This document shows positions 2,505 through 52,221 of a stretch of DNA of 64,000 bases, one piece after another. Each line of letters starts with the position of its first letter. The stretch's first letter is position 1. The DNA lies in IMG/VR virus record IMGVR_UViG_3300044972_002389, positions 62,001 through 126,000 of that record; one strand, 5' to 3'. The notes beneath the pieces are model-generated. The model saw only the letters and a list, made by a program, of their open reading frames with translations. It had not been told where the DNA came from and searched no databases. Made by a program: the position numbers and the translations under genes.

Positions 2505-2768
2505 CTAATCTTCAACTATCAACAATTTCAAATCCCCTGAGCCCTTCAATAGTCTATGGAAGGTGTCTCGGGGGATTCTCACGACATCGCCGGGCTTGAG
2601 ATTGCAGGGCATGCAGTTGTCCATTTGAAGTTGCCAACCATTACCCTCAACCACTGTAATAAGTCTGTGACAGTGATCTCGATGCCACACTAGCTCATGA
2701 GAATCTACAGATTGAAAGAATGTTCTTTCCAAACCTTGAATTTGTTTCTTGTCACTGTAGGGATTCAT
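2505..2768 (-). CDS. Small cupin-fold protein
   Basis: WHRD...V.EG.GWQLQ and PGD...IP...FHRL.KG cupin-like motifs; ATG overlaps the upstream stop as TAATG at 2770-2766. Confidence 0.7.
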   Translation of the reverse strand: MNPYSDKKQIQGLERTFFQSVDSHELVWHRDHCHRLITVVEGNGWQLQMDNCMPCNLKPGDVVRIPRDTFHRLLKGSGDLKLLIVED

Positions 2769-3346
2769 TACCACCATTTGGCACTAATTGGACTCAATCC
2801 CAAGGATTTAGTATAGCGGGGAACTCTACACGCCCAGTATCCAGCCTTCATTTTGTCTGTTTTTTGTTCACAGTTGTGACGAGAAGCAAACGCTTTGCGT
2901 CGTTTGGGATCGCGGATTTTAACACTCAAACCTGACACATCACCAAAGGCAATTTTTTTGACCCTGCCTGTTTTGGGATTCTTGACGTAGACGTAATACT
3001 TTTTAGGACCGCCTCTCTTGGGCTTGTTAAGCTCAACAGCTTTTCCTTGATACTCAGCCTCATCAAGACTTTCTGGAGTTTCAAAAATACAATCCAACGG
3101 AACCATTCTGCCTTCATACACACCAAACGTGCCTAAATCACTCTCAATCATGTCCTGGTCAAGAGCGTGTTCCAAGAGTATATCTCCACAAGAAACACGA
3201 CGTCGCATCTCACAAAAAAACTCAAACCAAGCTGGGCTGTGAATACGGAATATGTTATCAACTAGCGGAACTTTGTTATCCTGGTGCCATTGAATGGCTT
3301 GATTTACACTTTCATTCAAAGGTTGCGTAAGGTCTTGAATTTTCAT
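2768..3346 (-). CDS. Two-module putative internal head protein (PLNES / SLDEA linkers; basic Cys-containing C-terminal module)
   Basis: Starts MKIQDL, has LNES and LDEA junctions like the proteins at 4833-12554, and follows a minus-strand TAAATA at 3377-3382. Confidence 0.7.
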   Translation of the reverse strand: MKIQDLTQPLNESVNQAIQWHQDNKVPLVDNIFRIHSPAWFEFFCEMRRRVSCGDILLEHALDQDMIESDLGTFGVYEGRMVPLDCIFETPESLDEAEYQGKAVELNKPKRGGPKKYYVYVKNPKTGRVKKIAFGDVSGLSVKIRDPKRRKAFASRHNCEQKTDKMKAGYWACRVPRYTKSLGLSPISAKWW

Positions 3347-3376: not shown

Positions 3377-3382
3377 TATTTA
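3377..3382 (-). promoter_or_regulatory. Late promoter core TAAATA (minus strand)
   Basis: tattta on the plus strand, upstream of the ATG at 3346. Confidence 0.55.
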
Positions 3383-4111
3383 GAAACCAAAATGCTCTTG
3401 TAAGATCTTGTCTATTTTGTGCAGTTGTTGAGTTACAGGCCCTAATAGGCAGTGAGTCCAGTGAGAAGGAACTATCGGAGGCAAGTAGCCGTCAATGTCC
3501 CGATTTAAATTTAACACGTTGATTACACTAGGACAATCCAACACTTTTGCGAAGTTATCAACAGGAACAACTGAGCCTGATGTTCCAATACACAGGAACA
3601 GGCTTTTGTCTGTAAGGCTGTCCAGTGTGTTGTAGAGATATTGGTATTTGGGTGCTGGTTCACCAAACAACACTACCGCAGGCTTGACATCAGTCAGGCT
3701 TTGGCAATTGGGACAACCTAGGGAGATGTTGTATCGAGTGTAGCCAATATTCCAAACATGGCCACAGTTTTCGCATTGCATTTCATCCAGCTGTCCGTGA
3801 ACATGCACAACAGGGATGCAACCAGCCTCCTCTAGCAAGAGGTCTGCATTTTGAGTTATCACTGTTGCACTGTATTTTCTCTGCCATTCTGCCACCTGTT
3901 TGTGGGCGGCGTTTGGCTGAAACTTCAGAAGCATTTCCCGTAAGTCGCTGTGAAATTCATTTACAATTTGAAAGTTTTGTCGCCAAGTGGCGTAATTACT
4001 GTAAACCAATGGATCATAACGGCTCCATAAACCTTCGCTATCTTCTCTAAATGTGGGGATGCCGCTTTCAGCACTCAAACCAGCGCCGCTAAAAATCAAT
4101 AATTGGGTCAT
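3380..4111 (-). CDS. Sir2/CobB-family NAD-dependent deacylase
   Basis: FSGAGLSAESGIPTFR, PNAAH, ITQNAD, HVHG, Zn ribbon CENC/CPNC, KPAVVLFGE, IGTSGSV; likely start MTQLLIF at 4111. Confidence 0.92.
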   Translation of the reverse strand: MTQLLIFSGAGLSAESGIPTFREDSEGLWSRYDPLVYSNYATWRQNFQIVNEFHSDLREMLLKFQPNAAHKQVAEWQRKYSATVITQNADLLLEEAGCIPVVHVHGQLDEMQCENCGHVWNIGYTRYNISLGCPNCQSLTDVKPAVVLFGEPAPKYQYLYNTLDSLTDKSLFLCIGTSGSVVPVDNFAKVLDCPSVINVLNLNRDIDGYLPPIVPSHWTHCLLGPVTQQLHKIDKILQEHFGF

Positions 4112-4197
4112 AATTTTGATTATGCAACAAATTTCTGGAGGGTTGCAATCCAATTCTCATGTTTACTGCCTTTGTATTGTGCTCACTGTCCAGACAA

Positions 4198-4207: not shown

Positions 4208-4846
4208 ATGCCATATTTGAATCATAATATCCCCGTTTTAACATGCCTAATACGTAACCAATACCTTTACAATCACACCAAAGGCCACGGCGAGTTCACT
4301 CCCTGTGATGTACACAGTGTCGCAAGTATGGAGAAACGCACGCCTTTATTTGAAGCATTTTTGGAAAATGGAGTGAACTGGACACGTCGACCCATAACTG
4401 CTTTTTGTTGGCGTAATGATGCACCAGTAAGACCACTTGCAGAACATGTTTATTGGGACTGTTTCAGTCATTATATTGATGTGCAGGTCCGGCAACGCAT
4501 GGCGGGGTTAAGGGCTACGTTGTTGGTTTACACTGGGGAACGTCGTCAAGGACAATACTGTATGACTTTAGACTGGGGTTGGGAAAACTCTGCTTTTACT
4601 GACACCAATTTCAGTGAAACGCCTGAACACAAATGCGCGCATTTGTTCAAAATGGATGAAGGAAACTATTATCTTTATCCCAACAATAGAATCATTTGGC
4701 ATGACAATGCTTGGGTGAAAAATCCTATAACCAGTAATCCTGGGTATCAAATAGACATGACAGTCTACAGTGTGGAGAACGCTGTGGACTTTTATACAGA
4801 TGACAGCTATATGACACATGTGGAGCCTGTAAATGAAGCTGGTTGA
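4208..4846 (+). CDS. Conserved phage hypothetical protein
   Basis: MPYLNHN...IRNQYLYNHTKGHGEF...PLFEAFLENGVNWTRRP resembles a family I recall from T4-like phages; function unknown. Confidence 0.75.
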   Translation: MPYLNHNIPVLTCLIRNQYLYNHTKGHGEFTPCDVHSVASMEKRTPLFEAFLENGVNWTRRPITAFCWRNDAPVRPLAEHVYWDCFSHYIDVQVRQRMAGLRATLLVYTGERRQGQYCMTLDWGWENSAFTDTNFSETPEHKCAHLFKMDEGNYYLYPNNRIIWHDNAWVKNPITSNPGYQIDMTVYSVENAVDFYTDDSYMTHVEPVNEAG

Positions 4847-7800
4847 TATTTTGGAAAACAAGGAGGACCAACAGAATCAAAAACCCAGTGTGTTCAGCCA
4901 GTGGGAAGACACTGACCCAAAGAATGACAAGCCGGAAGAGTCAAAAAATAATCCCAGTGAACTCTATCATAGCACTATACTAGACAATGCGCCTAATATC
5001 CTGCAATCAGGATATATAACAACCTCTATCTACAAAGATCCAGCCAAGGATATAGTGTTTGATTCTCGCTCTACAACACCCCATACATCACCAACTATAG
5101 CTGTTCTCACTTCTTGTGGGACACTGATGCAAACCTACAACGAACAAATTTCTCGCCAGCTAACGACGGCAAGCAGTCAACTGGGAACGCAAAGCAAAGC
5201 CTATCGAGCCTTGCGTGCCATCAGTCACGTTTTGGAATCACAGAAGCTTTTTGAAAACGATCCACAACTAGGTAACAACAGCATTTGGCTCTACACTGAA
5301 GGTTGCCAAAGTGCATTGCACATACTGCTCGACAACAAGACAGCAAAAATCACTTGGTTAGGTAGTTTGAATGGCACTGGTAGGCAACTTTTGGAGCAGG
5401 GGTTAGCACAAAGCCAGAAACAAGGTGCCTTACTCGCTGTTGTGAAACCCATCTGGAACAGCCACAAATTTTATGAGAAGATGGGATTTCAAGATCAAGG
5501 AACTGGTTATTGGAACTTACCTCTTGAGGAATCAGCTAATCAACTGGATCGCGCAGATCTAGAAGACTTATTGGGTGCAATCACATATGAGCAAGAAGAG
5601 ATTAACGACGCCAGCTATGATGCTGCGGGACCAAAGTATGAAAAACTTGACAAGGATTTCAAAGCCTTAGAGGCTGTTGCTTATGTGGTTAAAAATAACT
5701 TACGAGCACTTGACAATCCCAACTTGGGAAAAAATAGCATTTTCCTCTATAACTATACCCCAGATCTAGGCGTGTTCAGTGTAACTGCAATACATGTGGT
5801 GATTGAAAATCAAGTGGCGCATGTGAAATGGTTGGGCAGTTATGACAACAAACCTGGTGCTGGCAAAGCGTTGATGTTACAAGCCTTGACTATCGCAAAG
5901 AACAAAGGGGCCACCAAGAGCGTCGTAGAGGCCAAATGGGAAAGCGAAGGCTTTTATCACAAGCTGGGTTACGATGTGGAGAACAGAGGATCAAACAACC
6001 CATTTACAGGCACCAGTTTAGTCCAAATGGGAAAGAAGTTGGAAGAAGCTTGGACTGATGAAGACCAGCGTATGGTTCACAAAAATCCCACAATTCAAGA
6101 TTTGAAAAGGTTGGCACGCAACAACAAGTATCACAGTGCCAGATTTGTGATCTACAAAGATGGCAGTGTTGTGGCTGCGGATAGCGAACATTATACTCAC
6201 CACAGTGCTGCACCTGCCATGGGCGCTTGGGCTTTGAGAGGGTATGTGCAATACTTGGGTGGCAACGACTATGCCTATCGCAGCATGGAAGTCTACAGTC
6301 CCAAAAGTGTTGACCATCCTCTTTTCCGCAAGTGGGAATCTAGTGGTATAGAGAATGGCAATCCCTCTGTTGTTGAGGAAAAATGGACCAAAAAGTATAA
6401 GAAGAGTATCAACTGCTCTAATCCTCAAGGGTTCAGCCAACGTGCTCACTGTGCTGCTAGACGCAAACGACAAAAGGGCGGAAAGACAACTAGCAAGCCC
6501 TTGAATGAAAACAATAACGTAGAAATACACAACTATAAAAAGCTGGATCGCATCTTAGTTGCATTGTGTAACCTAGTTGACACCAGACGAAAGAAAAACC
6601 CTGACAAATACGGATGGGTAGCCGCAGGGTTGTTGGATCCCCGCAACCGTCTTGTAATAGGTTTCAGCACATTTGCCAATGACAAATGGTATCATGCTGA
6701 ACGATTGGCTATGAGGGCTTATCGTAAAAAATACGGAAGCATACCTGATGGCTGTATAATTGTAACCACATGCAGTCCATGCAGCGAGCAGATGCCAAGA
6801 TATGGTGAAAGTTGTACTGACCTAATCAACAAGAGTCCTGTCAAAAAAGTCTATTGCGGCTACTCTGATACAACTCAATCCCAAAGTCAACGCACTTTCA
6901 ATATTATGGTTACTGCTGATACAAACATACGAGAACGGTGCCAAAAATTTGCTGAAAACTTCATGGATTGGGAAGCGCAATATTTGGATGAAAGCTTGCG
7001 TGATTGGTTCAAACAAAAATGGGTGCGATTTGGGACAGATGGCAAGATCAGAGGCGACTGTGCTAGAGGCAGTGAAGGCGAAGGCAAGCCCAAATGCCTG
7101 CCACAGCGGAAGGCTTGGGCACTGGGCAAGAAAAAACGTGCAACTGCTGCTAGGCGCAAGCGTAGAGAAGATCCCAATCCTGAACGTGAAGGCAAGGCCC
7201 GGAACGTAGCCACAAAAGAAAGTGTTGGCTCTACAAAATTGGGAGATCTCTGCACTATCAAAACTAATTTTCCTGATGCTGACTTTTGGCTTGTGCGACG
7301 CAGTGATAGAACAAATGTGGGCACACCAGCCAAAGAATTCAGTCCCTATCATATTGGAATCAAAGTCACAGCTACTGAACAGCTGATGCCAGAATATCTC
7401 TACTATATGATGATGCATCTCCACAACCAAGGCTATTGGAACAGTCGAAGCATGGGCATGAGCAATCTTGTGCACATACGCACAGAAGATGTGAAAAACA
7501 TACAACTGGCTTTGACAGAGCATGAGCTGAAAGAAAACTCCAGTTGTCCACATTGCGGAGGCCAAATGGTTAACTACTCTATGCTCAGTGAAAAACAAGA
7601 TGCCTGCTACTACAAAGTCAAGAGTCGCTACAAAGTTTGGCCCAGTGCCTATGCCAGCGGTGCATTAGTGCAGTGCAGGAAAAAGGGTGCAAAAAACTGG
7701 GGCAAGAGCAAGACAAATGAAAGCATAAGCATTGATCAACAAGAGGAACATGGAGGTCTCGAAGCCTACATAACTGATACATCTACCCCACAATTGGTCA

Positions 7801-8561
7801 ATTATCTTGCAAGTGAAAATGCACCCGCCGACCTTGCAGAAAAATTGCAACGCAGATACAAAACAATAGCTGTGTTCAAAAACATATGGGTCGAGGAAGA
7901 TCATCAAGGGTCTGGAGTAGGTAGCTGGATTTTAGAGGCTGGTATTGGGGATGCAATAGACAACCAGGCTCATGCTGTCATTCTCACTGCTGTCTCAGAT
8001 GATCCCAAAAGACAATCACAACTTGAGAAATGGTATAAGTCTTATGACTTCAAAGAAATAGCTCGCAGTTCAACTGGGTATCCTGTGATGTTACTAGATT
8101 TAAACAAAGACCAGGTCTCAGAAGCTGCCCCGTGGCTCGGGCAGGGAGATGAGCCACTGCCCACTAAACTCTATCATGTCACAAGAACAAGAAACCGTTT
8201 GAGCATACGCCAGAGAGGACTTGTTCCCAAAACAAAGGAACATGATCATATATTGCGACAACCAGGTGTGTTTCTGTTTGAAACTTTTGAACAAGCTGAA
8301 GATTGGGCTTACTATTGGAGTCAAGATGAGGGCGAGAGTATGGATATATGGGAAATCAAGGTTCAAGATCCCAATGATCTAACTCCTGATCCAGCATTGG
8401 ATATTCAGCACGATTACGATGCATGGGTCATCTACAAGCCAATTCCTGCAGCCAATGTGAGGCTGAAATTTACGCAACGCTGGCCGGAACCTTGGGGAAA
8501 GCCTACTACAACGGTGAAAAAAATCCGCAACCTTGAAGAAGATCCTAATGAAACTGAATGA
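4833..8561 (+). CDS. 1242-aa modular protein: GNAT, GNAT, unknown, basic Cys module, Zn-deaminase, basic module, HsdS/TRD-like, Zn ribbon, basic module, GNAT, ART-like
   Basis: GNAT A/B motifs (GTGRQLL..FYEKMGF; GAGKALM..FYHKLGY; QGSGVGSWIL..WYKSYDF), HAE...SPC deaminase motif, LYHVT..GLVP ART-like motif; modules bounded by LEES, LEEA, VVEE, LNEN, LDES, TKES, LTEH, LSEK, TNES, VSEA. Confidence 0.85.
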   Translation: MKLVDILENKEDQQNQKPSVFSQWEDTDPKNDKPEESKNNPSELYHSTILDNAPNILQSGYITTSIYKDPAKDIVFDSRSTTPHTSPTIAVLTSCGTLMQTYNEQISRQLTTASSQLGTQSKAYRALRAISHVLESQKLFENDPQLGNNSIWLYTEGCQSALHILLDNKTAKITWLGSLNGTGRQLLEQGLAQSQKQGALLAVVKPIWNSHKFYEKMGFQDQGTGYWNLPLEESANQLDRADLEDLLGAITYEQEEINDASYDAAGPKYEKLDKDFKALEAVAYVVKNNLRALDNPNLGKNSIFLYNYTPDLGVFSVTAIHVVIENQVAHVKWLGSYDNKPGAGKALMLQALTIAKNKGATKSVVEAKWESEGFYHKLGYDVENRGSNNPFTGTSLVQMGKKLEEAWTDEDQRMVHKNPTIQDLKRLARNNKYHSARFVIYKDGSVVAADSEHYTHHSAAPAMGAWALRGYVQYLGGNDYAYRSMEVYSPKSVDHPLFRKWESSGIENGNPSVVEEKWTKKYKKSINCSNPQGFSQRAHCAARRKRQKGGKTTSKPLNENNNVEIHNYKKLDRILVALCNLVDTRRKKNPDKYGWVAAGLLDPRNRLVIGFSTFANDKWYHAERLAMRAYRKKYGSIPDGCIIVTTCSPCSEQMPRYGESCTDLINKSPVKKVYCGYSDTTQSQSQRTFNIMVTADTNIRERCQKFAENFMDWEAQYLDESLRDWFKQKWVRFGTDGKIRGDCARGSEGEGKPKCLPQRKAWALGKKKRATAARRKRREDPNPEREGKARNVATKESVGSTKLGDLCTIKTNFPDADFWLVRRSDRTNVGTPAKEFSPYHIGIKVTATEQLMPEYLYYMMMHLHNQGYWNSRSMGMSNLVHIRTEDVKNIQLALTEHELKENSSCPHCGGQMVNYSMLSEKQDACYYKVKSRYKVWPSAYASGALVQCRKKGAKNWGKSKTNESISIDQQEEHGGLEAYITDTSTPQLVNYLASENAPADLAEKLQRRYKTIAVFKNIWVEEDHQGSGVGSWILEAGIGDAIDNQAHAVILTAVSDDPKRQSQLEKWYKSYDFKEIARSSTGYPVMLLDLNKDQVSEAAPWLGQGDEPLPTKLYHVTRTRNRLSIRQRGLVPKTKEHDHILRQPGVFLFETFEQAEDWAYYWSQDEGESMDIWEIKVQDPNDLTPDPALDIQHDYDAWVIYKPIPAANVRLKFTQRWPEPWGKPTTTVKKIRNLEEDPNETE

Positions 8562-11442
8562 CCTATTGAACAAGCCTACCAGTAGCGTAGCTGAGCTGGC
8601 TAAAAAATACAAAGTGTCAACAGACTCTGTGGAGAAACAGCTGGCACAGGGCATCAAAGTGGAGATGGAACACACCCGGTTGCGGAGTGTGGCGCGAGAA
8701 ATAGCCTTGGATCACTTGGGTGAGGATCTTAACTATTACAAGAAATTGAGCAAACTTGAGAAAAAGCCTGCTCAAGAAGCTCTTCTGATAGAGCTGTTTG
8801 CCCTGCTAAATGAAGTAAAAATCGACAATGTGAGTGGCATTGGGGAAGTGCCTGACAATAAGAATGTGGATTATCTTGGCTTGAGAGTCGCGATGAAGCC
8901 CAGTGTATTTTTGAAATTGGCTAGCCCTTTGTCAAGAGAACATGCTGGGAGTGTGGATTATATCAAACAGCAACTAGATCAAGGGCAGGGAATGGCCAGT
9001 CCTTGGCTGGTCTTAGACATACCAATAGAATGGGAAAAAGGTCGTTATAATAAATCCGCAAGAGTAATTGGGCACGAAGGCCGCAACAGAATGTATGCGG
9101 TCCTAGAAACTGAAGGCGATGCACCTGTTGAAACTCATTTGTTTTTTGTCGGTGGATTGCGTGCTAGGCACATCAAACCTGAATGGATTGAAGCACTCAA
9201 CCTGCGTCTTGTACCACAGAGAGCAAACACTAGTGTATCTGGCCCGTTTTTTGAACTGCTGTTAAAGACTCAAAAAAGTCTCTCAGAAGAAAATGAAAAC
9301 AAAAGAGACACATACCGTGTAACCTGGAGAGGTAGATTGGGCGAATATGATCCCAATTATTTTGACATCAAAAGTGACCCACTTGAAGACGATGATGGCA
9401 AAGTCATCGCCGTAAAAGATCAGCTTGTTCCCAAATCTCATTTGCGTGCCAATTTAAACATAACTCCAAATCCCAACCTAGTGTATAGGGGCATGAGTAA
9501 TCATGAATTTCAAAATATCAAAAAAACAGGAGTGATACAAAGCAAAGGCGAGTATAACTTGGCTGGGCAACAGGGCTTAACCTATTTTTCAACTGAACCC
9601 AGGTCAGCTGAAACTTATGCTCATAGTTTTGCACCATGGAATCAAAAAGCCAACTGGGACAATCCAGCATGGGTAATTGCAGTGCCCAAACCTGATGAAT
9701 CAAAAATTGTGCATGTGCAAGGCACAGGATCACATGAAGTGGGAGTCAAAGGCTCTATACCAGCGAATCAAATAAGGGAGATATACCGAGGAAAGGTTGT
9801 AGAATACGATCCTGGTGTGCACAACCAAGTTGCACCATCAGCATGGCTGCATTGGGAGAAAATGCCTGTTGATACATTGTTAACAGAGCGCAAAGGTGCG
9901 CCTGGCACTCTCAAATCCAAAATCACCAGACTGTATGGCGGAGGTGTCACATGTGACAAAACACAAAAACTCAAAACACGCCAGGGTGCTACAACTCTAG
10001 ACAAACGCCAAGCCAACTGGTTTCAAAACAAACATTGCGGCGGAGCAACTAGAGTTGATGAAATCATAAGTGGTGAGCATATTCCAGGCGATTGGAAAAA
10101 ATATGGAAGCGGCGACGCAGAAATGTTTGAAACAGAGTTTGATCTTCAAGGATATAAGATCACAATAAGTGTGAGTCGGGATTGGGCCCAATCTGGTGCC
10201 TATGTGTTGATGAAGAAAAACATAGAGGCTGGAGCAAACCTGGTTGGCAGAGAAATAATATTCAGGGTAGATGGCGAAACTGATCCAACAGGCTTACTAG
10301 GCACAGGTGCAGCGAATGTAATTTCAATTGTTGTAGGAAAAATCATAGGACTACTACAAAATATAGAATGGGACTATTTGGTCTTCGCAGGTGCTGGGGA
10401 CAGTAGACAAAGAGTATATACTAAAATATTGAGTCAGATATCTCCAGGACTTGATTCAGAGCCAATGCAATTTGGAGATTGGTTCCTGCTGATCAAAAAC
10501 CATTTGTTGGCAGCAAAATCTCAAGAGCTGGATGAAGTTTTTAAAGGCAAGCCACTTCCTGGAGATTGGCAATCAATAAAGGGCGGTTCAACCCACTACA
10601 CTGAATTTGAATTTGCTGGCAGTGAAGTGCAAATAGCAGTCGTAAAAGACGCTTCTTATGAGCTTCAAACTATCTTGCAAAAGCAAGTGCCAGAAAACTG
10701 GGTTGGATATGAAGTGTCCTTCTCTGTAGATCACAGCATCTCTGTAACAGGTATGTTTGACCAAAAAAGTGCCCAATTATTTGATTTGATTATACGAAAA
10801 CTCAAATGGTTTTTCCAGACCCACAGCTGGGACTACATCAACTTCAGTGGGGATGAGCGCAGCCGCAACAAGCTCTATCTCCGGCTGGCAAAACAGTTGG
10901 CACCTGCTGATAGCACAGTGTTGCACACTAACAAAAGCTTTGCAATTGTCAAGCAGGACAAGCTTGCATCATTCACTAACTTGGACGAAAGTTTAAGTTA
11001 CAAAGGTTTGCGTCCTGGAGCAAATATTTGGTATGAGCCTGGCATGCAATATTCCCAATATAATTTATATCCAGGCAAAAGTATTGTGGGCCAGCGAGTA
11101 TACCATATGACCAATAAGCTTACAAGTATAATAAAGTCAGGCGGACTGAAACCAAAATATGATGAGACTGGTGCTAGAGAATTTGGCCGATATAGCACTG
11201 TGGAATATCCTTTCACTCCAGTTATTGCTATATTTTTTGATGTTGGTGAGCATGATTGGTTTGGCAAATACATCTTAAGTTGGGAAATAACACCTGAGGA
11301 TAAAACTGCACGAGCATATATGCCAGTAGATACCATGCAGCCTTCAGATAGAGATAATTTGCTGCCCAATTGTCAGGTAACACCTGTAAGTATTGATAGG
11401 ATTACTATCACAGATCTCAAAGGAAACCTTATAAAAGTATGA
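8548..11442 (+). CDS. ~964-aa modular protein: small helical domain, ParB-like, ART-like (YRG/YFST/E), basic Cys module, two copies of an unknown domain, ART-like (VYH/GLKP)
   Basis: Probable start MKLNDLLN at 8548 overlapping the previous stop; IGHEGRNR ParB-like motif; junctions LNE, LSEE, LTE, VDE, LDE, LDES. Confidence 0.85.
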   Translation: MKLNDLLNKPTSSVAELAKKYKVSTDSVEKQLAQGIKVEMEHTRLRSVAREIALDHLGEDLNYYKKLSKLEKKPAQEALLIELFALLNEVKIDNVSGIGEVPDNKNVDYLGLRVAMKPSVFLKLASPLSREHAGSVDYIKQQLDQGQGMASPWLVLDIPIEWEKGRYNKSARVIGHEGRNRMYAVLETEGDAPVETHLFFVGGLRARHIKPEWIEALNLRLVPQRANTSVSGPFFELLLKTQKSLSEENENKRDTYRVTWRGRLGEYDPNYFDIKSDPLEDDDGKVIAVKDQLVPKSHLRANLNITPNPNLVYRGMSNHEFQNIKKTGVIQSKGEYNLAGQQGLTYFSTEPRSAETYAHSFAPWNQKANWDNPAWVIAVPKPDESKIVHVQGTGSHEVGVKGSIPANQIREIYRGKVVEYDPGVHNQVAPSAWLHWEKMPVDTLLTERKGAPGTLKSKITRLYGGGVTCDKTQKLKTRQGATTLDKRQANWFQNKHCGGATRVDEIISGEHIPGDWKKYGSGDAEMFETEFDLQGYKITISVSRDWAQSGAYVLMKKNIEAGANLVGREIIFRVDGETDPTGLLGTGAANVISIVVGKIIGLLQNIEWDYLVFAGAGDSRQRVYTKILSQISPGLDSEPMQFGDWFLLIKNHLLAAKSQELDEVFKGKPLPGDWQSIKGGSTHYTEFEFAGSEVQIAVVKDASYELQTILQKQVPENWVGYEVSFSVDHSISVTGMFDQKSAQLFDLIIRKLKWFFQTHSWDYINFSGDERSRNKLYLRLAKQLAPADSTVLHTNKSFAIVKQDKLASFTNLDESLSYKGLRPGANIWYEPGMQYSQYNLYPGKSIVGQRVYHMTNKLTSIIKSGGLKPKYDETGAREFGRYSTVEYPFTPVIAIFFDVGEHDWFGKYILSWEITPEDKTARAYMPVDTMQPSDRDNLLPNCQVTPVSIDRITITDLKGNLIKV

Positions 11443-17368: not shown

Positions 17369-18001
17369 GTGAGCCCTCTCTTTGGAACCTCTCTTGAAGA
17401 GAGGGCTCAACTCTTACGGTATAAGTCCTACCCTCCAACTTCACCGGCTTCTTGGAACTCACCAACAAGCACCCCCACTAGCACCTTAGTGTTCGTTACT
17501 GGCCATGTGTGTCTAGATTCAGTAGTGGACGACTTTCATGAAGTCGACAGCATAATTGAAGCTGAAGATTTGCTGTTTTCACAAGCAAACACTGTGGTGG
17601 AAAAATACGATGGATTGCCATTTGCACTCCGTAGACAGTCAACCTTATTAGGGCATCAAAATCGTCGAGGCTGTGGTAATCTCATTTTCACAACTCCGGA
17701 GATACGTGCCCAAATACCAGACAATCAACTGTATATTGATGACAGCAATTCCTGTAAACAAGTGGGCTGTTGGTACTCAGCAGGCGTGTTGCGCAAATTT
17801 GACAAACAAGGCAGTCAAATATTTGTTAGTGATCGGGTACCCGAGCACACTGCCTATGTGGCATACAAAGGTTCAAGTGATTTAGACAGCGTTGCACTCC
17901 TGTTCAAAAAAGAAGATCAAATGCGACTGTGGTGTCCCTTAAGAGTTGACATACCCGTGAGCATCGCTCACTATATTACAAAGGTTGTGTTTGACAACTG
18001 A
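17369..18001 (+). CDS. Truncated paralogue of the C-terminal part of a gp23-type major capsid protein
   Basis: RRGCGNLIFTTP, QVG, IFVS and AYVAYKGSSDLDSVALL echo the gp23-family segments I recall (RRGAGN..V.SP, VGTL, VYV, LIGYKGSSE.DA..FY); only 210 aa. Confidence 0.55.
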   Translation: MSPLFGTSLEERAQLLRYKSYPPTSPASWNSPTSTPTSTLVFVTGHVCLDSVVDDFHEVDSIIEAEDLLFSQANTVVEKYDGLPFALRRQSTLLGHQNRRGCGNLIFTTPEIRAQIPDNQLYIDDSNSCKQVGCWYSAGVLRKFDKQGSQIFVSDRVPEHTAYVAYKGSSDLDSVALLFKKEDQMRLWCPLRVDIPVSIAHYITKVVFDN

Positions 18002-18019
18002 CTCAATTGTGGAAAAATT

Positions 18020-18223
18020 ATGAAATCCCAAAAAACTCGAATATATGAGCCTACTGAACTCAAAACTTTATTTGAAGCATTGAACAGTGCACCACCTTGG
18101 CTAAGTCGAAGGTTCATACTCAAGAACATGATGGGTTGGACTGATGATGATTTGAAACAAAATGCCATCCTGGTTGACGAAGAGACAACACAACGCAAAA
18201 TGGGTAACAAAGGGAGTTATTGA
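18020..18223 (+). CDS. 67-aa protein resembling the C-terminal helix region of gp20-type portal proteins
   Basis: WLSRRFILKNMMGWTDDDLKQNAILVDEE resembles the portal C-terminal (Y/F)LS.RF.LK..LG.T.EE...N..L..EE. Confidence 0.5.
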   Translation: MKSQKTRIYEPTELKTLFEALNSAPPWLSRRFILKNMMGWTDDDLKQNAILVDEETTQRKMGNKGSY

Positions 18224-38779: not shown

Positions 38780-39216
38780 TTGCTTTCTTGTAGGTGTATG
38801 AAACTTCCAGTGTTGCATACTTTTGTTAAAAGATCTGCTATATGCGTGAATCTAGAGGATATTTTGTAATTCTAAGCTGTTTCATTACCAAAAAATCATA
38901 AGGTAATTACAGATCCTACAACACAGTCGTCAAGTCTCTTGGAGAATTGGTAGTAGCGACCACTTTTTTTGGACTGTATGCTATCCAATATCAAACTCAT
39001 TGTGAGTATTTGCCGGCGTCGATCTCAAGTTATTTGTGCAACCACACCAACAGGGCTGTTGATGTCTCTTATAAGGATGTGCACAAAACTATGCAAAGGA
39101 TCACTTATAGTGGCAGAGAACTTTGGATTTTGTTTAATTATGCTGTTGAGCAGTGGGCTACCTGCTCCAGGTAACGCACTGCTCAAGTGAAACTCTTTTA
39201 AATTTACTGTTTGCAT
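38780..39216 (-). pseudogene. Decayed sulfotransferase gene
   Basis: FHLSSALPGAGSPLLNSIIKQNP resembles the sulfotransferase 5'-PSB loop (LPRSGSTLL...QNP); in-frame TGA at 39027-25, then DRRRQIL..ILDS remnants and further stops/frameshifts. Confidence 0.7.
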
Positions 39217-40901
39217 ACTAACATTCCCAGATCGGGAAGATACAGGTAGTGGATATCACAGTTGAAGATTGTTATCAAGGCGTCTACCAGTGTTTCCACC
39301 AATGGCTGCCCAGCTAGATTGAAACTAGTGTTAAACAGCAACGGTGTTTCGGTTTGTTGCCGAAAAGCATCTAGCAGCTGATACAAATGCAAGTTTTGCT
39401 CGCTGGTGACAGTTTGTACTCTGCAGGTGCCATCCACATGTGTAACTGCAGGAATCAACTCTCTTTGGCTTTCCTTCACATTTACAGCATACATCATGTA
39501 AGGGCTTTCATTGAGATTGCGCATGTCAAACCAGTCATTTGCATGTTCTGCCATCACACTCGCAGCAAAAGGGCGGAACCATTCACGATTTTTAACTTGG
39601 TTAACAATATCCTTGCCGTTGGTTACTCGAGGATCAAAAAGAATGCTTCTGTTGCCTAGTGCACGAGGCCCACCTTCACTAGCGCCTTGAAACAAAGCCA
39701 CAATATTGCCTTCTGCCAGCAGTAGTGCCACTTCAGCAGGTGATGTGTCTCTCATGCTGATACCTTCAACAGAAGCAATAGTGGTTTCAATCTGATTATA
39801 GTCTGGCAACACACTCAAGTAGAGATGAGAGAGTGGTTGAGGTGTAGTATCTTGGCTCAGAACATAATAAGCATGCCGAGCTAAACCAATGGCTGTTCCA
39901 CCATCATGTGCAATGGGATCAATGTAAAACTCAATATTAGGGAAACGTTCTAGATATTTGTAGTTGGCAACACAGTTGAGTGCATAACCACCACTGATTA
40001 CAATGCGATTTTCTCCAGTAATGTCAATAGCACGCTCAATCAACTTCACCATCTGCTCTTCAGTTTCTTTCTGCACATGGTAGGCTAGATTCTTGTCTTG
40101 ATCTCGCACTAATTCAAAGTTATTATGCCAGTCACTTGGTTGTGTGTATCTACGCAAGTAAGGAAATCTATTCTCGTCAATGTGTGCGCCGGTGGGATAT
40201 CGAGGAATCAACAAGTTCTTGTTGCCTTTATTGTTGATGAAAAAGGCAGGAATGTTGCTGTCTTCTTGGCCATAAGGAGCTAGTCCCATGGTCTTCCCAG
40301 CTTCAATAGCCCCAAATCCTAAATAATCACTTACACTCTCGTATGCCTTAACAATAGTAACATTATTATCAAATTCTTGGATACCGTTGTCGTAGTAGAG
40401 GCTGGTTTCCGCACCGTCACTGTATCTTTTGTAAACTGCGTTGAACTCATGTGGATAGCTGCAATGATAGATGCTTTCAGTTTCAAAACCCCCAGTAAGT
40501 GGTAGTCCTTCTCCCATGCTTTCTTGCACATAGCTTCCGGCCCCATCTACGACCAAGGCGCATGCTGTTTCAAAACCACTGCCATAGAAGGCATTAGCTG
40601 CATGACCCAAGTGATGTAGATGGCCCATTAGGGTAACTTGCACATTAGGACTGAATTTGCGAGCTAATGCAGCATAGGCATTCTCGTTAGTCCAAGGAAG
40701 AGTAACCCAATTAGTGGTGGTCCCACCAATGATCAAGTGGTCTACCAAATGATTAGTTAGTACCCATAGCATGGCTCTAAATGGATTACCGTCATACTTT
40801 AGGCGACTCCATCGTTCTTCCTCGCTATAAAACAGCAACTTACCGTCTTCAACAAGCGCCACACTGCTGTTGTGACCGGGATTGATGGCCATTATTTTCA
40901 T
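39204..40901 (-). CDS. O-carbamoyltransferase (NodU/CmcH/TobZ family)
   Basis: GHNSS, HHLGHA..AF, VVDGAG, AGKTMGLAPYG, SGGYALNC, HDGGTAIG, E.GPRALGNRSIL, KNREWFRPFA, HVDGTCR.QTV, NTSFNLAG.PL. Confidence 0.95.
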   Translation of the reverse strand: MKIMAINPGHNSSVALVEDGKLLFYSEEERWSRLKYDGNPFRAMLWVLTNHLVDHLIIGGTTTNWVTLPWTNENAYAALARKFSPNVQVTLMGHLHHLGHAANAFYGSGFETACALVVDGAGSYVQESMGEGLPLTGGFETESIYHCSYPHEFNAVYKRYSDGAETSLYYDNGIQEFDNNVTIVKAYESVSDYLGFGAIEAGKTMGLAPYGQEDSNIPAFFINNKGNKNLLIPRYPTGAHIDENRFPYLRRYTQPSDWHNNFELVRDQDKNLAYHVQKETEEQMVKLIERAIDITGENRIVISGGYALNCVANYKYLERFPNIEFYIDPIAHDGGTAIGLARHAYYVLSQDTTPQPLSHLYLSVLPDYNQIETTIASVEGISMRDTSPAEVALLLAEGNIVALFQGASEGGPRALGNRSILFDPRVTNGKDIVNQVKNREWFRPFAASVMAEHANDWFDMRNLNESPYMMYAVNVKESQRELIPAVTHVDGTCRVQTVTSEQNLHLYQLLDAFRQQTETPLLFNTSFNLAGQPLVETLVDALITIFNCDIHYLYLPDLGMLVCKQ

Positions 40902-41833
40902 CAGCGTGTTTTCCTTTCAATATCTGCAACAATCTTTTGATAGATGTCGTCTAGTTCTTTGGTTGAGAATTTCATTGTGCCTTCATTCAGCCTATTGCTG
41001 AGATTTACGTCCAGACCAGCAATACGAATAGGACTATATTTCCTAGCAGCAGGCTTTTCAATTATTTGAAAGTAATCTGGATAGCTGGTGTTCTTGGGAA
41101 ACGTACTCCCAATAATTACTGTGCCTGGTACTCCAGAGGCTCTAGCAATATGCTGGCCTACACTGTCACATCCTACAAAATAGTCAGAGTTGGCAACTAG
41201 AGCTGACCAAACTCTTAAATCAGCAGTGTATTTGGCACTCCAGTTGTCGTCTTTCAATTGAAAGTCAGGCTCGCCAAAAAAGATCATGTTGTATTTTTGA
41301 TTAAGACGCCGGCTCAGGCTCAAATAGTCGTTTGAGCTTAAGCTTCTGCTTTCTTCGTCAATCACTGTGGCACGATCCAGTTTGGCACCACGGCCAAAGG
41401 GTTGAAATACAATAGTTTTGTTCTTTTTGCTCACACTTTTGAGATCAGCTATGGTATTCTTGGCTACTAGAGTTTCTTGTTGATTGAATGCCAAGCGTGG
41501 TGGCAATAAATCACTGTGATCTGTAGTTTGGTTGATTTCCCTGTCAAAAGCTTCAGCCAAACTTATCTCTTGCCTAAAATATGCTGGGATACGATAAGGC
41601 TCCGGGGTTACTATTTGATCAGCATTCTTGACTACGTTGTCAAAAACACCTTTTGTATCAAGATTGTAGGTGCGATCTTGCAGCTCGGGAATACCCCAGT
41701 ATAAGAAATCCCATGCCCCAACCAACACAGCCCATTCGCTGTTGGGATGCAATCGACCGTATTTGATTAATGCAGGAATAGCGGTGATTACTCTACCAGC
41801 ACCACCGTCTATCCAAAATATCTTTTTTGTCAT
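40901..41833 (-). CDS. GT9-like glycosyltransferase
   Basis: IDGGAGRVI.AIPA at the N-terminus and LRVWSALV...DYFVGCDSVGQH.A; start MTKKIF after gagg SD. Confidence 0.7.
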   Translation of the reverse strand: MTKKIFWIDGGAGRVITAIPALIKYGRLHPNSEWAVLVGAWDFLYWGIPELQDRTYNLDTKGVFDNVVKNADQIVTPEPYRIPAYFRQEISLAEAFDREINQTTDHSDLLPPRLAFNQQETLVAKNTIADLKSVSKKNKTIVFQPFGRGAKLDRATVIDEESRSLSSNDYLSLSRRLNQKYNMIFFGEPDFQLKDDNWSAKYTADLRVWSALVANSDYFVGCDSVGQHIARASGVPGTVIIGSTFPKNTSYPDYFQIIEKPAARKYSPIRIAGLDVNLSNRLNEGTMKFSTKELDDIYQKIVADIERKTR

Positions 41834-41955
41834 TCTAGTTCCTCGAAGCTTCAAGATATTATAAGGCAAATTGACTATTTTTGCCAAAATTTAAGATTCA
41901 TCTGCCTATAATAGACTAAAAAGCTGTTGAGAACTTGACCAACACTTGTAGGTAG

Positions 41956-50947: not shown

Positions 50948-52210
50948 ATGTCTATCGCCAATGACGATTCAGCTATGACCAAGATCCGCAAGGCTCGATT
51001 GAAGTTGATGTTCACCCATCCTTTTTTCGGAACATTGGTCATGAACCTTCCGGTTAAGGACGCAACTGATGCTGGATGGTGCCCGACTGCTGCGGTTGAT
51101 GGTCGATATATCTACTACAACCGAAATTTCATCAACGACCTATCAGTTGATGAAGTGCTGTTTGTTTTTGCGCACGAGTGCTACCATTGTATCTTTGATC
51201 ACTTTGGTCGACGCAGCCATCGTGATCCGCAGTGGTTTAACATGGCCAATGATTACGTTATAAACGGCCTACTTGTGCAAGACAAGATTGGCAAAATGCC
51301 AGAAAAAAAGGTAGAAGTTAAAGACGCTGATGGCAAATCCACCCAGCGTGTTGGCCTCTACGACAGCAAGTATCTGGGCTGGACGTCAGAAAAAGTCTAT
51401 GACGACCTTGTAAAGCGCAAGGTGAAGAAACAGCTTACTCTCGACGTGCACATTGAGATGGGCAAAGATGCCCAAAACTCAGATGGGCAAAAAAGCAACC
51501 AAGGCATTCCTGTTGAGATTGATGAGGAAAGCCTCAAACAGCTTCGAGCTGAGCTCAAAGACAAGGTTCTGCAAGCTGCCAATGCCTCTGCTGGAAATCT
51601 TCCAGCCAGCATTGCACGTCTTGTGGACCATCTTGTGGAGCCCAAGATCAACTGGCGTGACTTCATTCGCGAGACTATTCAAAGCCAACTCACAAGCGAC
51701 TACACCTACCGGCGCCCCAATCGTCGCCATCATGGTGGTGATGTGGTGTTTGCCAGCCTGGAGCGTGAGGAAACTGTGGATGTGGAGGTCAGCATTGACC
51801 AAAGCGGCAGCATCTCTGCTGACATGGCACGCGACTTTCTAAGTGAAGTTTTGGGGATAACTTCACAATATGATAATTTCCGGCTTGCAGTCAGCACCTT
51901 TGATACCCGGCTCTATAATCGCCAGGAGTTTACTCCAGAAAACATTGAAGAGCTGCTGGAGTATGAGCCCATGGGTGGCGGCGGAACCGACATTTCTGTG
52001 GTTATTAGATCACTCAAGGAAATGAATGTTGAGCCCAAGGTATTGATCATCTTCACAGATCTTGAATCAAGTGAGTTTGGCGAGCCCAATTTCTGTCCCG
52101 TTGTTTGGCTTGTCAACAATCCTTGGAACAAGAATATCGTTCCGCCGTTTGGTACCTGGGTGCGGTTCACAAAAGAAGAAGGGGTGGCTGAAACAGGAGA
52201 TGCAGGCTAG
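50948..52210 (+). CDS. HExxH metallopeptidase-like + VWA protein (DUF2201-type MoxR partner)
   Basis: PTAAVDG..IYYN, FAHECYHC (HExxH), N.A.D..IN; MIDAS IDQSGS, GGGGTD, IIFTD. Confidence 0.9.
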   Translation: MSIANDDSAMTKIRKARLKLMFTHPFFGTLVMNLPVKDATDAGWCPTAAVDGRYIYYNRNFINDLSVDEVLFVFAHECYHCIFDHFGRRSHRDPQWFNMANDYVINGLLVQDKIGKMPEKKVEVKDADGKSTQRVGLYDSKYLGWTSEKVYDDLVKRKVKKQLTLDVHIEMGKDAQNSDGQKSNQGIPVEIDEESLKQLRAELKDKVLQAANASAGNLPASIARLVDHLVEPKINWRDFIRETIQSQLTSDYTYRRPNRRHHGGDVVFASLEREETVDVEVSIDQSGSISADMARDFLSEVLGITSQYDNFRLAVSTFDTRLYNRQEFTPENIEELLEYEPMGGGGTDISVVIRSLKEMNVEPKVLIIFTDLESSEFGEPNFCPVVWLVNNPWNKNIVPPFGTWVRFTKEEGVAETGDAG

Positions 52211-52221
52211 ATAATTGCCTC

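What the first reader, a model, noticed from the sequence alone, without database searches (positions are those of the whole stretch)
6501..6995. Zn-dependent deaminase module inside the polyprotein
Seen: HAE (6693-6701) and CSPC (6771-6782) with a further Cys 10 residues later, bounded by LNEN and LDES. Known: HxE...PCxnC is the CDA/TadA/RibD deaminase signature. Inference: an injected deaminase could edit host tRNA/mRNA/ssDNA or destroy nucleotide immune signals before phage genes are expressed.
Basis: partly seen in the sequence, partly recalled or inferred. Interest (0 to 1): 0.62.

Follow-up and report, generated by a model that had tools for sequence, protein, structure and literature searches.

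The report
Phage polyprotein carries a deaminase cassette
The segment encodes an intact zinc deaminase of a family found almost only in viruses. It sits as one cut-out-able cassette in a 1242-residue multi-enzyme protein of a huge T4-like phage, probably loaded into the capsid and released into the host, but its substrate is unknown.

Summary
HAE (6693-6701), CSPC (6771-6782), a Cys at 6813-6815, and the borders LNEN (6501) and LDES (6984) are all in frame in ORF 4833-8561 (1242 aa).

**Deaminase identity**
- Residues 560-720 pass Pfam PF00383 (42 bits, cut-off 25).
- They fold confidently (pLDDT 90.5) into a deaminase fold, Z 15 to both TadA and the RibD deaminase domain.
- H621, E623, P649-C650 and C661 are invariant in 36 relatives. 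The first Cys of CSPC is not conserved.
- The family has 382 loci in IMG/VR but only one, on a 4-kb MAG contig, among 185,579 prokaryote species.
- It is not RibD: no reductase or GTP cyclohydrolase II is present. It is not the housekeeping dCMP deaminase, which the phage encodes separately.

**New point: the borders are protease-type junctions**
- In dozens of unrelated architectures the cassette is flanked by hydrophobic-x-Glu junctions (16/17 upstream, 43/57 downstream; p about 1e-8).
- Module gains and losses among near-identical phages break at such sites.
- The same phage encodes a T4 gp21-type prohead protease, which cuts after that motif.

**Most likely reading:** a capsid-loaded effector polyprotein, processed by the prohead protease. 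Packaging, cleavage and substrate are inferred, not shown.

The parts
4833..8561 (+). ORF of 1242 aa (P0001): modular polyvalent protein of about 11 cassettes
   Evidence: An identical ORF occurs on IMG/VR contigs up to 328.6 kb.
4833..4856 (+). N-terminal 8 residues ending I-L-E: possible short propeptide or capsid-targeting tag (inferred)
   Evidence: Only 8 of about 248 ORFs of the record start with this kind of tag, and both adjacent polyproteins are among them. T4 propeptides are 7-65 residues long (PMC9026906).
5256..6047 (+). Two GNAT acetyltransferase cassettes (aa 142-233 and 234-405), each ending L-E-E
   Evidence: Pfam PF08445, PF13673 and PF13508. P0097 begins at about residue 402.
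6048..6380 (+). Cassette of unknown function (aa 406-516), ends V-E-E
   Evidence: No Pfam hit. The 612-aa relatives start at about residue 510, and P0096 carries a PARP-like insertion here.
6381..6509 (+). Small basic Cys-containing cassette (aa 517-559), ending in the upstream junction L557-N-E559 (6501-6509)
   Evidence: The same cassette lies upstream of the deaminase in P0002 and P0097-P0100 but downstream of it in L019, L029 and L039.
6510..6992 (+). Deaminase cassette (aa 560-720). Downstream junction L718-D-E720 at 6984-6992
   Evidence: PF00383, 42.4 bits. AF2 pLDDT 90.5. Foldseek and VIA-align matches to RibD and TadA. Family alignment A1.
6693..6701 (+). H621-A-E623: zinc ligand and catalytic Glu
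   Evidence: Invariant in 36 sequences. Aligned to the HAE of RibD 2hxv.
6777..6815 (+). P649-C650 ... C661: the two Cys zinc ligands, with a 10-residue insert that holds the invariant R656
   Evidence: The insert aligns with the PC-x8-C of RibD.
6993..7220 (+). Basic Cys-containing cassette (aa 721-796)
   Evidence: phrog_23735 and phrog_12753. Homology breakpoints at about residues 803-814.
7221..7535 (+). Cassette of unknown function (aa 797-901), ends L-K-E
   Evidence: No Pfam hit. Part of phrog_727.
7536..7721 (+). CxxC element plus DUF5872-like cassette (aa 902-963)
   Evidence: PF19197, weak. phrog_3477 and phrog_38880.
7722..8123 (+). Third GNAT cassette (aa 964-1097), ends V-S-E. Absent from close relatives
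   Evidence: PF13508 and PF00583. L014, P0096, P0097 and L015 lack residues 965-1091.
8124..8558 (+). C-terminal cassette (aa 1098-1242) with weak Tpt1/KptA and DUF7002 similarity
   Evidence: PF01885 at E 0.012 and PF22531 at E 0.19. The fold attempt failed at pLDDT 54.6. Stand-alone homologues are P0124-P0126.
8548..11442 (+). Second adjacent modular protein (about 964 aa) with an N-terminal DUF5661 and the same kind of N-terminal tag

Best explanation
Window 6510-6992 encodes a catalytically intact zinc-dependent hydrolytic deaminase of the cytidine/deoxycytidylate-deaminase superfamily. H621, C650 and C661 hold the zinc and E623 is the proton shuttle. It belongs to a family that is essentially restricted to viruses. 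Its nearest sequence relative is the RibD deaminase domain, and by fold it is equally close to TadA.

It is one of about eleven cassettes strung together in a 1242-aa polyvalent protein of a huge T4-like phage (about 400 kb by completeness estimate). The cassettes are joined by hydrophobic-x-Glu junctions, which is the specificity of T4 gp21-type prohead proteases, and the phage encodes such a protease.

Proposed mechanism (inferred):
1. The precursor is incorporated into the prohead core.
2. The prohead protease cuts it after E559 and E720, and at the other junctions, into separate small enzymes.
3. These are ejected with the DNA.
4. The freed roughly 19-kDa deaminase converts an amino group to a carbonyl on a nucleobase of a nucleotide-type substrate in the newly infected cell, as part of host take-over or counter-defence.

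Shown: the motifs, the fold, family conservation, virus restriction, junction conservation, and presence of the protease. Inferred: cleavage, packaging, ejection and substrate.
For: **Deaminase identity**
- PF00383 scores above its cut-off.
- The catalytic residues are invariant in 36 sequences.
- The AF2 model has pLDDT 90.5 and pTM 0.86.
- Foldseek's best match is the RibD deaminase domain 2hxv, E 6e-8. VIA-align gives Z 15.1 for TadA, RibD and ADAT2 alike.
- Relatives differ by 8 synonymous and 0 non-synonymous codons.

**Virus-restricted family**
- 382 loci in IMG/VR against 1 in the genomes of 185,579 prokaryote species.
- The ESM Atlas clusters are 98-100% viral.

**Cassette behaviour**
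- The module occurs alone (155-290 aa).
- It also occurs inside proteins of 690-1900 aa with varying partners: GNAT, PARP-like, DUF5661, Amidoligase_2, cytidylyltransferase-like and ParB_N.

**Junctions**
- [LIVMF]-x-E precedes the module in 16 of 17 non-redundant junctions (null 0.27, p 6e-9).
- It follows the module in 43 of 57 (null 0.39, p 8e-8).
- Module gains and losses among 83-98% identical relatives break at residues 405, 516, about 963 and 1097, each a Glu junction.

**Protease**
- G001 carries the identical ORF and is collinear with the window's record.
- It has the gene order head maturation protease, scaffold-like protein, major head protein. The protease matches PF03420 at 79.7 bits and phrog_207 at E 2e-56.
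- The scaffold-like protein has 6.5 such sites per 100 aa, against about 2 elsewhere.

**Literature**
- T4, phiKZ and SPN3US prohead proteases cut C-terminal to Glu at short x-X-E motifs.
- T4 Alt and the internal proteins are head-packaged, processed and ejected (PMC5694885; PMC9026906).
- Polyvalent phage proteins are predicted to be virion-delivered (PMC5512222; PMC9503650).
Against: - There is no direct evidence of cleavage, packaging or ejection. No cultured relative and no virion proteome exist, and tblastn found no match in 50,697 deposited phage records.
- The gene lies among replication and auxiliary genes (Sir2, UvdE, resolvase, PolB), not next to head genes.
- No T4-type late promoter motif stands before it.
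- [LIVMF]-x-E is a common tripeptide (27 in this protein). About a quarter of downstream junctions lacked a hydrophobic P3 in my count.
- The N-terminal tag is short and its role is a guess.
- Fold comparison cannot separate nucleic-acid from small-molecule deaminases.
Confidence: 0.5

Rival explanations
1. The protein is an uncleaved, cytoplasmic multi-domain enzyme made after infection. The Glu-ending junctions are only flexible linkers, and the deaminase works while tethered to its neighbours.
For: The gene sits among replication and auxiliary genes, not head genes. Polyvalent proteins as first described need not be cleaved (PMC5512222). No experimental cleavage data exist.
Against: Junctions with hydrophobic P3 and Glu P1 recur across many non-homologous neighbour cassettes. 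Cassette order is free, and cassettes are gained and lost exactly at these sites. The phage encodes the matching protease. Most stand-alone versions also carry a short M-K-hydrophobic-x-E leader before the module start.
Confidence: 0.25
2. It is a nucleotide-pool enzyme: a second dCMP/dCTP or other nucleotide deaminase that feeds phage DNA synthesis or base modification, regardless of packaging.
For: The nearest sequence relatives act on free nucleotide-like substrates: RibD, with dCMP deaminase 1vq2 weakly. The invariant Arg in the PC...C insert and the RibD-like G-x-x-D-P loop fit a phospho-ribosyl substrate (the role of these residues is from memory of RibD structures and is a lead only).
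Against: The same phage lineage already has a canonical dCMP deaminase (G002, PF00383 72.7 bits, phrog_174 E 1e-34), and G003 and G004 hold both kinds. The module lacks the second zinc insert and the PCxxC spacing of dCMP deaminases (features from PMC3239186).
Confidence: 0.2
3. It is a polynucleotide editor: a TadA-like or toxin-like deaminase acting on host tRNA, mRNA or ssDNA after injection.
For: VIA-align Z 15.1 to TadA with and without RNA (6l2m, 2b3j) and to ADAT2. There is a long conserved C-terminal helix as in TadA. A weak MafB19-like toxin deaminase hit appears at E 1e-3, below cut-off.
Against: At sequence level RibD, not TadA, is the best match, and the PC-x10-C insert is absent from TadA. 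No nucleic-acid-binding domain is consistently attached.
Confidence: 0.15
4. It is a true RibD: an auxiliary riboflavin-biosynthesis gene.
For: JGI's automatic name is 'pyrimidine deaminase RibD-like protein'. The best PDB hit is RibD.
Against: TIGR00326 scores 17 bits against a cut-off of 156. No RibD_C reductase and no GTP cyclohydrolase II occur in five related records, one of them complete, and the controls were positive. The His that marks the RibD insert is not conserved (PMC3239186).
Confidence: 0.02

Closest known systems
RibD/RibG deaminase domain (e.g. PDB 2hxv, 4g3m, 3zpg)
   Same: HAE and PC...C motifs with an insert between the two Cys ligands. A G-x-x-D-P loop follows strand 4. 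It is the best sequence match (E 2e-7 with the family profile) and the best Foldseek match.
   Different: There is no reductase domain and no riboflavin genes in the phage. The insert is 10-14 residues long and lacks the conserved His. Helix 4 is reduced to a loop. Identity is about 22%.
TadA / ADAT2 tRNA adenosine deaminases
   Same: Same fold at Z 15 over about 136-139 residues, with a long C-terminal helix.
   Different: TadA has PCxxC without an insert. There is no significant sequence match, and nothing shows RNA binding.
Phage dCMP deaminase (T4 Cd, PDB 1vq2; cyanophage S-TIM5 4p9e)
   Same: Same superfamily, and phage-encoded.
   Different: The match is much weaker (E 7e-3; TM about 0.46-0.48). 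The second zinc site is absent. The same phage lineage has a separate canonical dCMP deaminase.
T4 Alt and internal proteins IPI-III (head-packaged, gp21-processed, ejected effectors)
   Same: A gp21-type protease is present. Junctions are hydrophobic-x-Glu. There is a short N-terminal leader ending in such a motif. Effector-type enzymes are included (PMC9026906).
   Different: In T4 each effector is a separate gene that loses only terminal propeptides. Here many effectors appear concatenated and would be released by internal cuts. No deaminase is known among T4 head proteins. None of this has been tested experimentally here.
Polyvalent proteins of phages and conjugative elements (Iyer et al. 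2017, PMC5512222)
   Same: Many unrelated effector domains (GNAT, ART-like) sit in one polypeptide of a portal-terminase phage, and the protein is predicted to be virion-delivered.
   Different: The main text of that survey and of the 2022 NAD-ADPr survey lists no nucleotide deaminase domain in such proteins. Neither describes regular prohead-protease-type junctions between the domains.

Membership tests
CDA superfamily (PF00383, cytidine/deoxycytidylate deaminase zinc-binding region) | H(C)xE motif supplying a zinc ligand and the catalytic Glu | tested here: met
   H621-A-E623, invariant in 36 sequences.
CDA superfamily (PF00383, cytidine/deoxycytidylate deaminase zinc-binding region) | PC-x(n)-C motif supplying two Cys ligands | tested here: met
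   P649-C650 and C661 are invariant. C647 is not conserved.
CDA superfamily (PF00383, cytidine/deoxycytidylate deaminase zinc-binding region) | Score above Pfam's gathering cut-off | tested here: met
   38.7 bits (whole protein) and 42.4 bits (module) against 25.
CDA superfamily (PF00383, cytidine/deoxycytidylate deaminase zinc-binding region) | Three-layer alpha/beta/alpha deaminase fold | tested here: met
   AF2 pLDDT 90.5. Foldseek probability 1.0 to RibD, TadA and dCMP deaminase. VIA-align Z 15.
CDA superfamily (PF00383, cytidine/deoxycytidylate deaminase zinc-binding region) | Zinc binding and hydrolytic deamination | not testable with these tools
   Needs protein, metal analysis and enzyme assays.
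RibD (riboflavin) deaminase | Insert within the PC...C motif | tested here: met
   10 residues here against 8 in 2hxv, aligned by HMMER.
RibD (riboflavin) deaminase | Conserved His in that insert (Iyer et al. 2011, Table 1) | tested here: not met
   The position is Q653 here and varies (H, Q, T, R, K, Y) in relatives. The feature is taken from PMC3239186.
RibD (riboflavin) deaminase | Pathway partners: RibD_C reductase and GTP cyclohydrolase II | tested here: not met
   Neither PF01872 nor PF00925 is found in G000-G004, which include a complete 360.7-kb genome. Controls were positive.
RibD (riboflavin) deaminase | Equivalog model TIGR00326 above its cut-off | tested here: not met
   17 bits against 156.35.
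dCMP deaminase (T4 Cd / ComEB) | Bihelical zinc-binding insert between strand 2 and helix 2, and PCxxC spacing | tested here: not met
   Only a short turn precedes HAE, and the spacing is PC-x10-C. The feature list is from PMC3239186.
dCMP deaminase (T4 Cd / ComEB) | Acts as the phage's dCMP deaminase | tested here: not met
   A separate canonical dCMP deaminase is present in G002, G003 and G004.
TadA/ADAT2 tRNA deaminase | PCxxC without insert, and significant sequence similarity | tested here: not met
   The similarity is at fold level only. There is no TadA hit by sequence at E<=1.
Polyvalent proteins (Iyer et al. 2017) | Several unrelated effector-type domains in one polypeptide of a phage or mobile element | tested here: met
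   Three GNATs, the deaminase, a weak Tpt1/ART-like domain, a DUF5872-like domain and others.
Polyvalent proteins (Iyer et al. 2017) | Delivery in the virion | not testable with these tools
T4-type prohead-processed head proteins (Alt, IPs) | Phage encodes a gp21-type (Peptidase_S77) prohead protease | tested here: met
   G001 is the same phage, with exact collinear matches. It gives PF03420 at 79.7 bits and phrog_207 at E 2e-56, next to scaffold-like and major head proteins. The window's own 223-kb record is truncated before that region.
T4-type prohead-processed head proteins (Alt, IPs) | Cleavage motif hydrophobic-x-Glu at the ends of the mature part | tested here: met
   L557-N-E559 and L718-D-E720 in the window. 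Across relatives, 16/17 upstream and 43/57 downstream.
T4-type prohead-processed head proteins (Alt, IPs) | N-terminal capsid-targeting sequence | tested here: inconclusive
   The first 8 residues end in I-L-E, and a similar tag occurs in 8 of about 248 ORFs.
T4-type prohead-processed head proteins (Alt, IPs) | Observed cleavage and presence in virions | not testable with these tools
   Needs proteomics or in vitro protease assays.

The most novel reading that the evidence does not exclude
Huge T4-like phages use prohead-protease-cleavable 'cassette' polyproteins as a plug-and-play way to load many small effector enzymes into the capsid. The virus-specific RibD/TadA-like deaminase cassette is a new kind of ejected counter-defence enzyme. 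It would inactivate a nucleotide-based host immune molecule by deaminating its base, for example cyclic or ADP-ribose-derived signals or antiviral nucleotide analogues.
Probability: 0.12. Interest if true: 0.85.

Novelty: new variant of a known kind. Interest (0 to 1): 0.6.

Why it matters
If the cassette model holds, it extends the T4 Alt / internal-protein paradigm. Effectors would no longer be one per gene but concatenated and shuffled as cassettes, released by the head protease. That would explain the many orphan multi-domain giants in huge-phage genomes.

It would also add a deaminase to the list of virion-delivered enzymes. Neither survey of polyvalent or NAD-ADPr phage effectors that I read lists one. 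The family is compact (about 160 aa), virus-specific and has hundreds of natural variants. Its substrate, whether a nucleotide, a signalling molecule or a nucleic acid, is therefore of interest both for phage-host conflict and as a possible enzyme tool.

If the module is instead merely a second nucleotide-pool deaminase, the finding is ordinary.

Tried and rejected
- **Deposited phages.** Megablast of the ORF and tblastn of the module against 50,697 deposited phage records found no match, so no cultured relative could be used.
- **Protease in the window's record.** PF03420 was not found in the window's own 223-kb record. This is explained by truncation, because the collinear 328.6-kb record has it.
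- **Head-gene fragments in the window.** Gp23 and portal Pfam models gave only weak fragments. They were not used.
- **Late promoter.** The T4 late-promoter octamer has 4 matches against 1.3 expected, none upstream of the ORF. It says nothing about timing.
- **Context of stand-alone homologues.** Neighbours on 440-kb and 350-kb contigs are mostly unannotated, so nothing could be inferred.
- **C-terminal cassette.** The fold of aa 1098-1242 from a 6-sequence alignment reached pLDDT 54.6, too poor to search. Its ART/Tpt1-like nature rests only on sub-threshold Pfam hits.
- **Unknown cassettes.** Pfam found nothing for aa 1-145, 406-520 or 800-905.
- **Searches not run.** I did not run the large representative-protein search, because relatives were already plentiful.
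- **Riboflavin and housekeeping dCMP deaminase readings.** Both were considered and rejected.
Full report
**1. Where the finding lies**

The window is bases 61942-125941 of a 223-kb IMG/VR virus record with an estimated completeness of 54%. It has about 44% G+C.

The finding lies in ORF 4833..8561 on the + strand, 1242 aa, stored as P0001. Its neighbours are:
- a UvdE endonuclease, a resolvase/invertase and a Sir2 protein;
- a phrog_3704 protein whose stop overlaps the ORF's start;
- a second large modular protein downstream with an N-terminal DUF5661;
- a T4-type family-B DNA polymerase.

Further on, the window holds a 2378-aa repetitive virion structural protein, a carbamoyltransferase and homing endonucleases.

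**2. Observation check**

The motifs are not chance. Pfam PF00383 (dCMP_cyt_deam_1) matches residues 586-676 with 38.7 bits on the whole protein and 42.4 bits on the excised module, against a gathering cut-off of 25.

**3. What the module is**

*Relatives.* A word-based search with residues 556-722 returned 93 stand-alone relatives of 154-293 aa and 44-62% identity, all carrying PF00383. Several lie on contigs of 150-440 kb.

*Conservation.* In an alignment of the module with 35 of them (A1), the following are invariant: H621, E623, P649, C650, C661, an Arg in the insert between the two Cys, the V-Y-x-G-x-x-D-x-x-Q stretch after strand 4, and a Cys in the last helix. The first Cys of CSPC alternates with Leu and is therefore not a ligand.

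*Fold.* AlphaFold2 on this alignment gives a confident model, pLDDT 90.5 and pTM 0.86, with the order helix, two strands, HAE helix, strand, second-ligand helix, two strands, long C-terminal helix.
- Foldseek's best solved matches are the RibD deaminase domain (2hxv, E 6e-8, TM 0.66), Mycoplasma TadA, other RibD/RibG entries and human dCMP deaminase.
- VIA-align ties TadA, RibD and ADAT2 at Z 15.1. Guanosine and cytosine deaminases follow at Z 14.
- So the fold is certain, but the substrate class cannot be read from it.

*Sequence.* RibD is the nearest solved relative: E 4e-4 with the single sequence and 2e-7 with the family profile. It shares the unusual insert between the PC and the second Cys.

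*Selection.* Close relatives differ in the module by 8 synonymous and no non-synonymous codons.

**4. What it is not**

It is not a riboflavin enzyme.
- The RibD equivalog model scores 17 bits against 156.
- The His that marks the RibD insert is not conserved (feature list from PMC3239186).
- Five related phage records, one of them complete at 360.7 kb with terminal repeats, contain neither the RibD reductase domain nor GTP cyclohydrolase II. Both searches rang in the control genomes.

It is not the phage's housekeeping dCMP deaminase.
- Record G002 carries the identical 1242-aa ORF and also encodes a separate canonical dCMP deaminase (PF00383 72.7 bits, phrog_174 E 1e-34).
- G003 and G004 likewise hold both kinds.

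**5. Distribution**

A pattern-plus-tblastn scan found 382 loci in IMG/VR. It found a single locus, on a 4-kb contig of a metagenome-assembled archaeal genome, among one genome each of 185,579 prokaryote species.

The nearest ESM Atlas clusters are 98-100% viral. BFVD's nearest entries are uncultured Caudovirales proteins already auto-named as deaminase-domain proteins. The family is therefore essentially virus-restricted, has been named by pipelines, and is uncharacterised.

**6.

*Varying partners.* Searching for long proteins that contain the module gave 28 proteins of 690-1900 aa. The partner Pfam domains vary: GNATs, a PARP-like domain, DUF5661, Amidoligase_2, a cytidylyltransferase-like domain and ParB_N. 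Seventy-seven more ORFs came from IMG/VR loci.

*Junctions.* In almost every case the residues just before the module start and just after its last helix form a hydrophobic-x-Glu tripeptide, although the neighbouring cassettes are unrelated.
- Upstream examples: L-N-E, V-S-E, L-S-E, L-A-E, V-T-E, V-I-E.
- Downstream examples: L-D-E, L-N-E, I-N-E, I-S-E, I-K-E, L-R-E.
- After reducing redundancy, 16 of 17 upstream junctions have [LIVMF]-x-E within the last 16 residues. Random windows of the same proteins give 0.27 (p 6e-9).
- Downstream, 43 of 57 have it within 22 residues, against 0.39 (p 8e-8). Several 'misses' are F-L-N-E junctions that my parser cut through.

*Free order.* The same small cassettes appear on either side of the deaminase in different phages.

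*Gains and losses.* Relatives 83-98% identical to the window's protein differ by whole cassettes:
- one lacks residues 965-1091 (the third GNAT);
- one starts at about residue 402;
- three start at about residue 510;
- one has a PARP-like cassette inserted after residue 516.

Each breakpoint falls at a Glu-ending junction: 405, 516, about 963 and 1097. Combined with Pfam and PHROG matches, this gives the eleven-cassette map listed under parts. The deaminase cassette is residues 560-720, nt 6510-6992.

**7. The matching protease**

Prohead proteases of T4 (gp21), phiKZ and SPN3US all cut C-terminal to Glu in short x-X-E motifs. T4 Alt and the internal proteins are loaded into the prohead core through short N-terminal sequences, trimmed by gp21 and ejected with the DNA. 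T4 propeptides are as short as 7 residues (PMC5694885; PMC9026906).

The window's own record lacks a Peptidase_S77 match because it ends too early. Record G001 (328.6 kb) carries the identical ORF, and three 60-base probes taken from G001 match the window's record exactly, with a constant 60-bp offset. G001 encodes, in T4 order:
- a head maturation protease (PF03420 79.7 bits, phrog_207 E 2e-56);
- a 401-aa scaffold-like protein;
- the major head protein (phrog_138 E 1e-97).

The scaffold-like protein has 26 [LIVMF]-x-E sites, or 6.5 per 100 aa. Its neighbours have 1.5-3.3. This is what one expects of a core protein that is chopped up by such a protease.

The polyprotein starts with eight residues ending I-L-E. 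Only 8 of about 248 ORFs in the record have this kind of start, among them both adjacent modular proteins. About half of the stand-alone deaminases in the alignment carry a five-to-eight-residue M-K/R-hydrophobic-x-E leader before the module start.

**8. Most likely mechanism, and its limits**

I conclude that the segment encodes an active-site-complete zinc deaminase that is one cleavable cassette of a virion-destined effector polyprotein.

*Shown:*
- motif, fold, conservation and purifying selection;
- virus restriction;
- cassette mobility and junction conservation;
- presence of the cognate protease type.

*Inferred:*
- actual cleavage, capsid loading and ejection;
- everything about the substrate.

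The invariant Arg in the PC...C insert and the RibD-like D-P loop hint at a phospho-ribosyl-bearing substrate. That rests on my memory of RibD structures and is only a lead.

The surrounding cassettes and neighbours have an NAD/ADP-ribose flavour: Sir2 next door, weak Tpt1/KptA and PARP-like matches, and cytidylyltransferase-like fusions in relatives. This fits the virion-delivered NAD-ADPr effectors discussed in PMC9503650. But cassettes of a cleaved polyprotein need not work together.

Three points count against packaging:
- the gene lies among replication and auxiliary genes;
- no late-promoter motif is visible;
- there is no proteome.

**9. Comparison with the literature**

The 2017 survey of polyvalent proteins (PMC5512222) lists GNATs, ARTs, kinases, peptidases and many nucleic-acid enzymes. 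It mentions deaminases only in passing, in connection with the fold. The 2022 NAD-ADPr survey does not mention deaminases at all. The 2011 deaminase survey lists dCMP deaminases as the viral members and describes toxin deaminases delivered by secretion systems.

In the papers I could search, I found no description of regular prohead-protease-type junctions between cassettes of such proteins. I therefore rate the finding as a new variant of known kinds, namely the CDA deaminases together with polyvalent and head-packaged effectors. It is not categorically new.

**10. Things that did not work or were not done**

I did not pursue it by other tools and did not use read laying, so there is no expression evidence.
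- The fold of the C-terminal cassette failed at pLDDT 54.6.
- I did not run the large representative-protein search, because relatives were already plentiful.

Noticed in passing
window 8548-11442 (+): A second modular protein of about 964 aa lies directly downstream. It has an N-terminal DUF5661, the same M-K-L-x-D-L-L start and several Glu-ending junctions. It also contains stretches resembling ParB-like and ART-like motifs and a C-terminal Y-H-x-T module like the one at the C-terminus of P0001.
   Followed up: partly
P0001 residues 965-1091 and ~516; relatives L014, L015/L016/L042, P0096, P0097: Phages 83-98% identical in this protein differ by presence or absence of whole cassettes (third GNAT, N-terminal GNAT pair, a PARP-like insert). 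Cassette turnover is therefore fast at the population level.
   Followed up: yes
window 6381-6509 and 6993-7220; loci L019, L029, L039; proteins P0002, P0097-P0100: Small basic Cys-containing cassettes of about 40-75 aa recur on either side of the deaminase in different phages. They have no Pfam family. One downstream type in relatives is DUF6321 (PF19846). They could be DNA-binding internal-protein-like pieces.
   Followed up: partly
window 3380-4153 (-) and 4209-4846 (+): A Sir2-family protein (PF02146, E 3e-37) is transcribed divergently from a phrog_3704 protein. The stop of the phrog_3704 gene overlaps the polyprotein's start by 14 bases, so the two are probably co-transcribed.
   Followed up: no
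L093:9419-10624 (G001): A 401-aa protein lies between the head protease and the major head protein. It has 26 [LIVMF]-x-E sites (6.5 per 100 aa), consistent with a gp22-like scaffold that is degraded by the protease.
   Followed up: partly
G000 ORFs at window 2768-3346 (-), 56517-57116 (+), and G000:213826-216045 (-): Only 8 of about 248 ORFs start with M-K/R-x(1-4)-D/E-hydrophobic. Besides the two polyproteins, these include a phrog_7595 protein and a 739-aa protein. They may share an N-terminal targeting tag.
   Followed up: no
window 17369-18200 (+); G000:143804-143983: Short ORFs give weak partial matches to the T4 Gp23 and portal Pfam models (18-28 bits). They may be fragments or distant paralogues rather than the real head genes, which lie beyond the end of this record.
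   Followed up: no
window 43538-50674 (-): A 2378-aa highly repetitive virion structural / tail-spike-like protein (phrog_23837, phrog_4636; 11-23 matched stretches).
   Followed up: no
window 39204-41887 (-), 50948-53265: A Nol-like carbamoyltransferase with a conserved unknown partner (phrog_8954), plus an HNH endonuclease and a homing endonuclease side by side.
   Followed up: no
L089 (JAGWGO010000152.1, 4184 bp): The only prokaryote-genome hit of the deaminase family is a 4-kb contig binned into a Thaumarchaeota MAG. It is probably a viral contig mis-binned, or a hint about hosts.
   Followed up: no
P0102, P0113-P0120 (relatives): In at least nine architectures the deaminase cassette shares a polypeptide with a cytidylyltransferase-like (NMNAT-type, PF01467) domain. 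This recurrent pairing might bear on the substrate.
   Followed up: no
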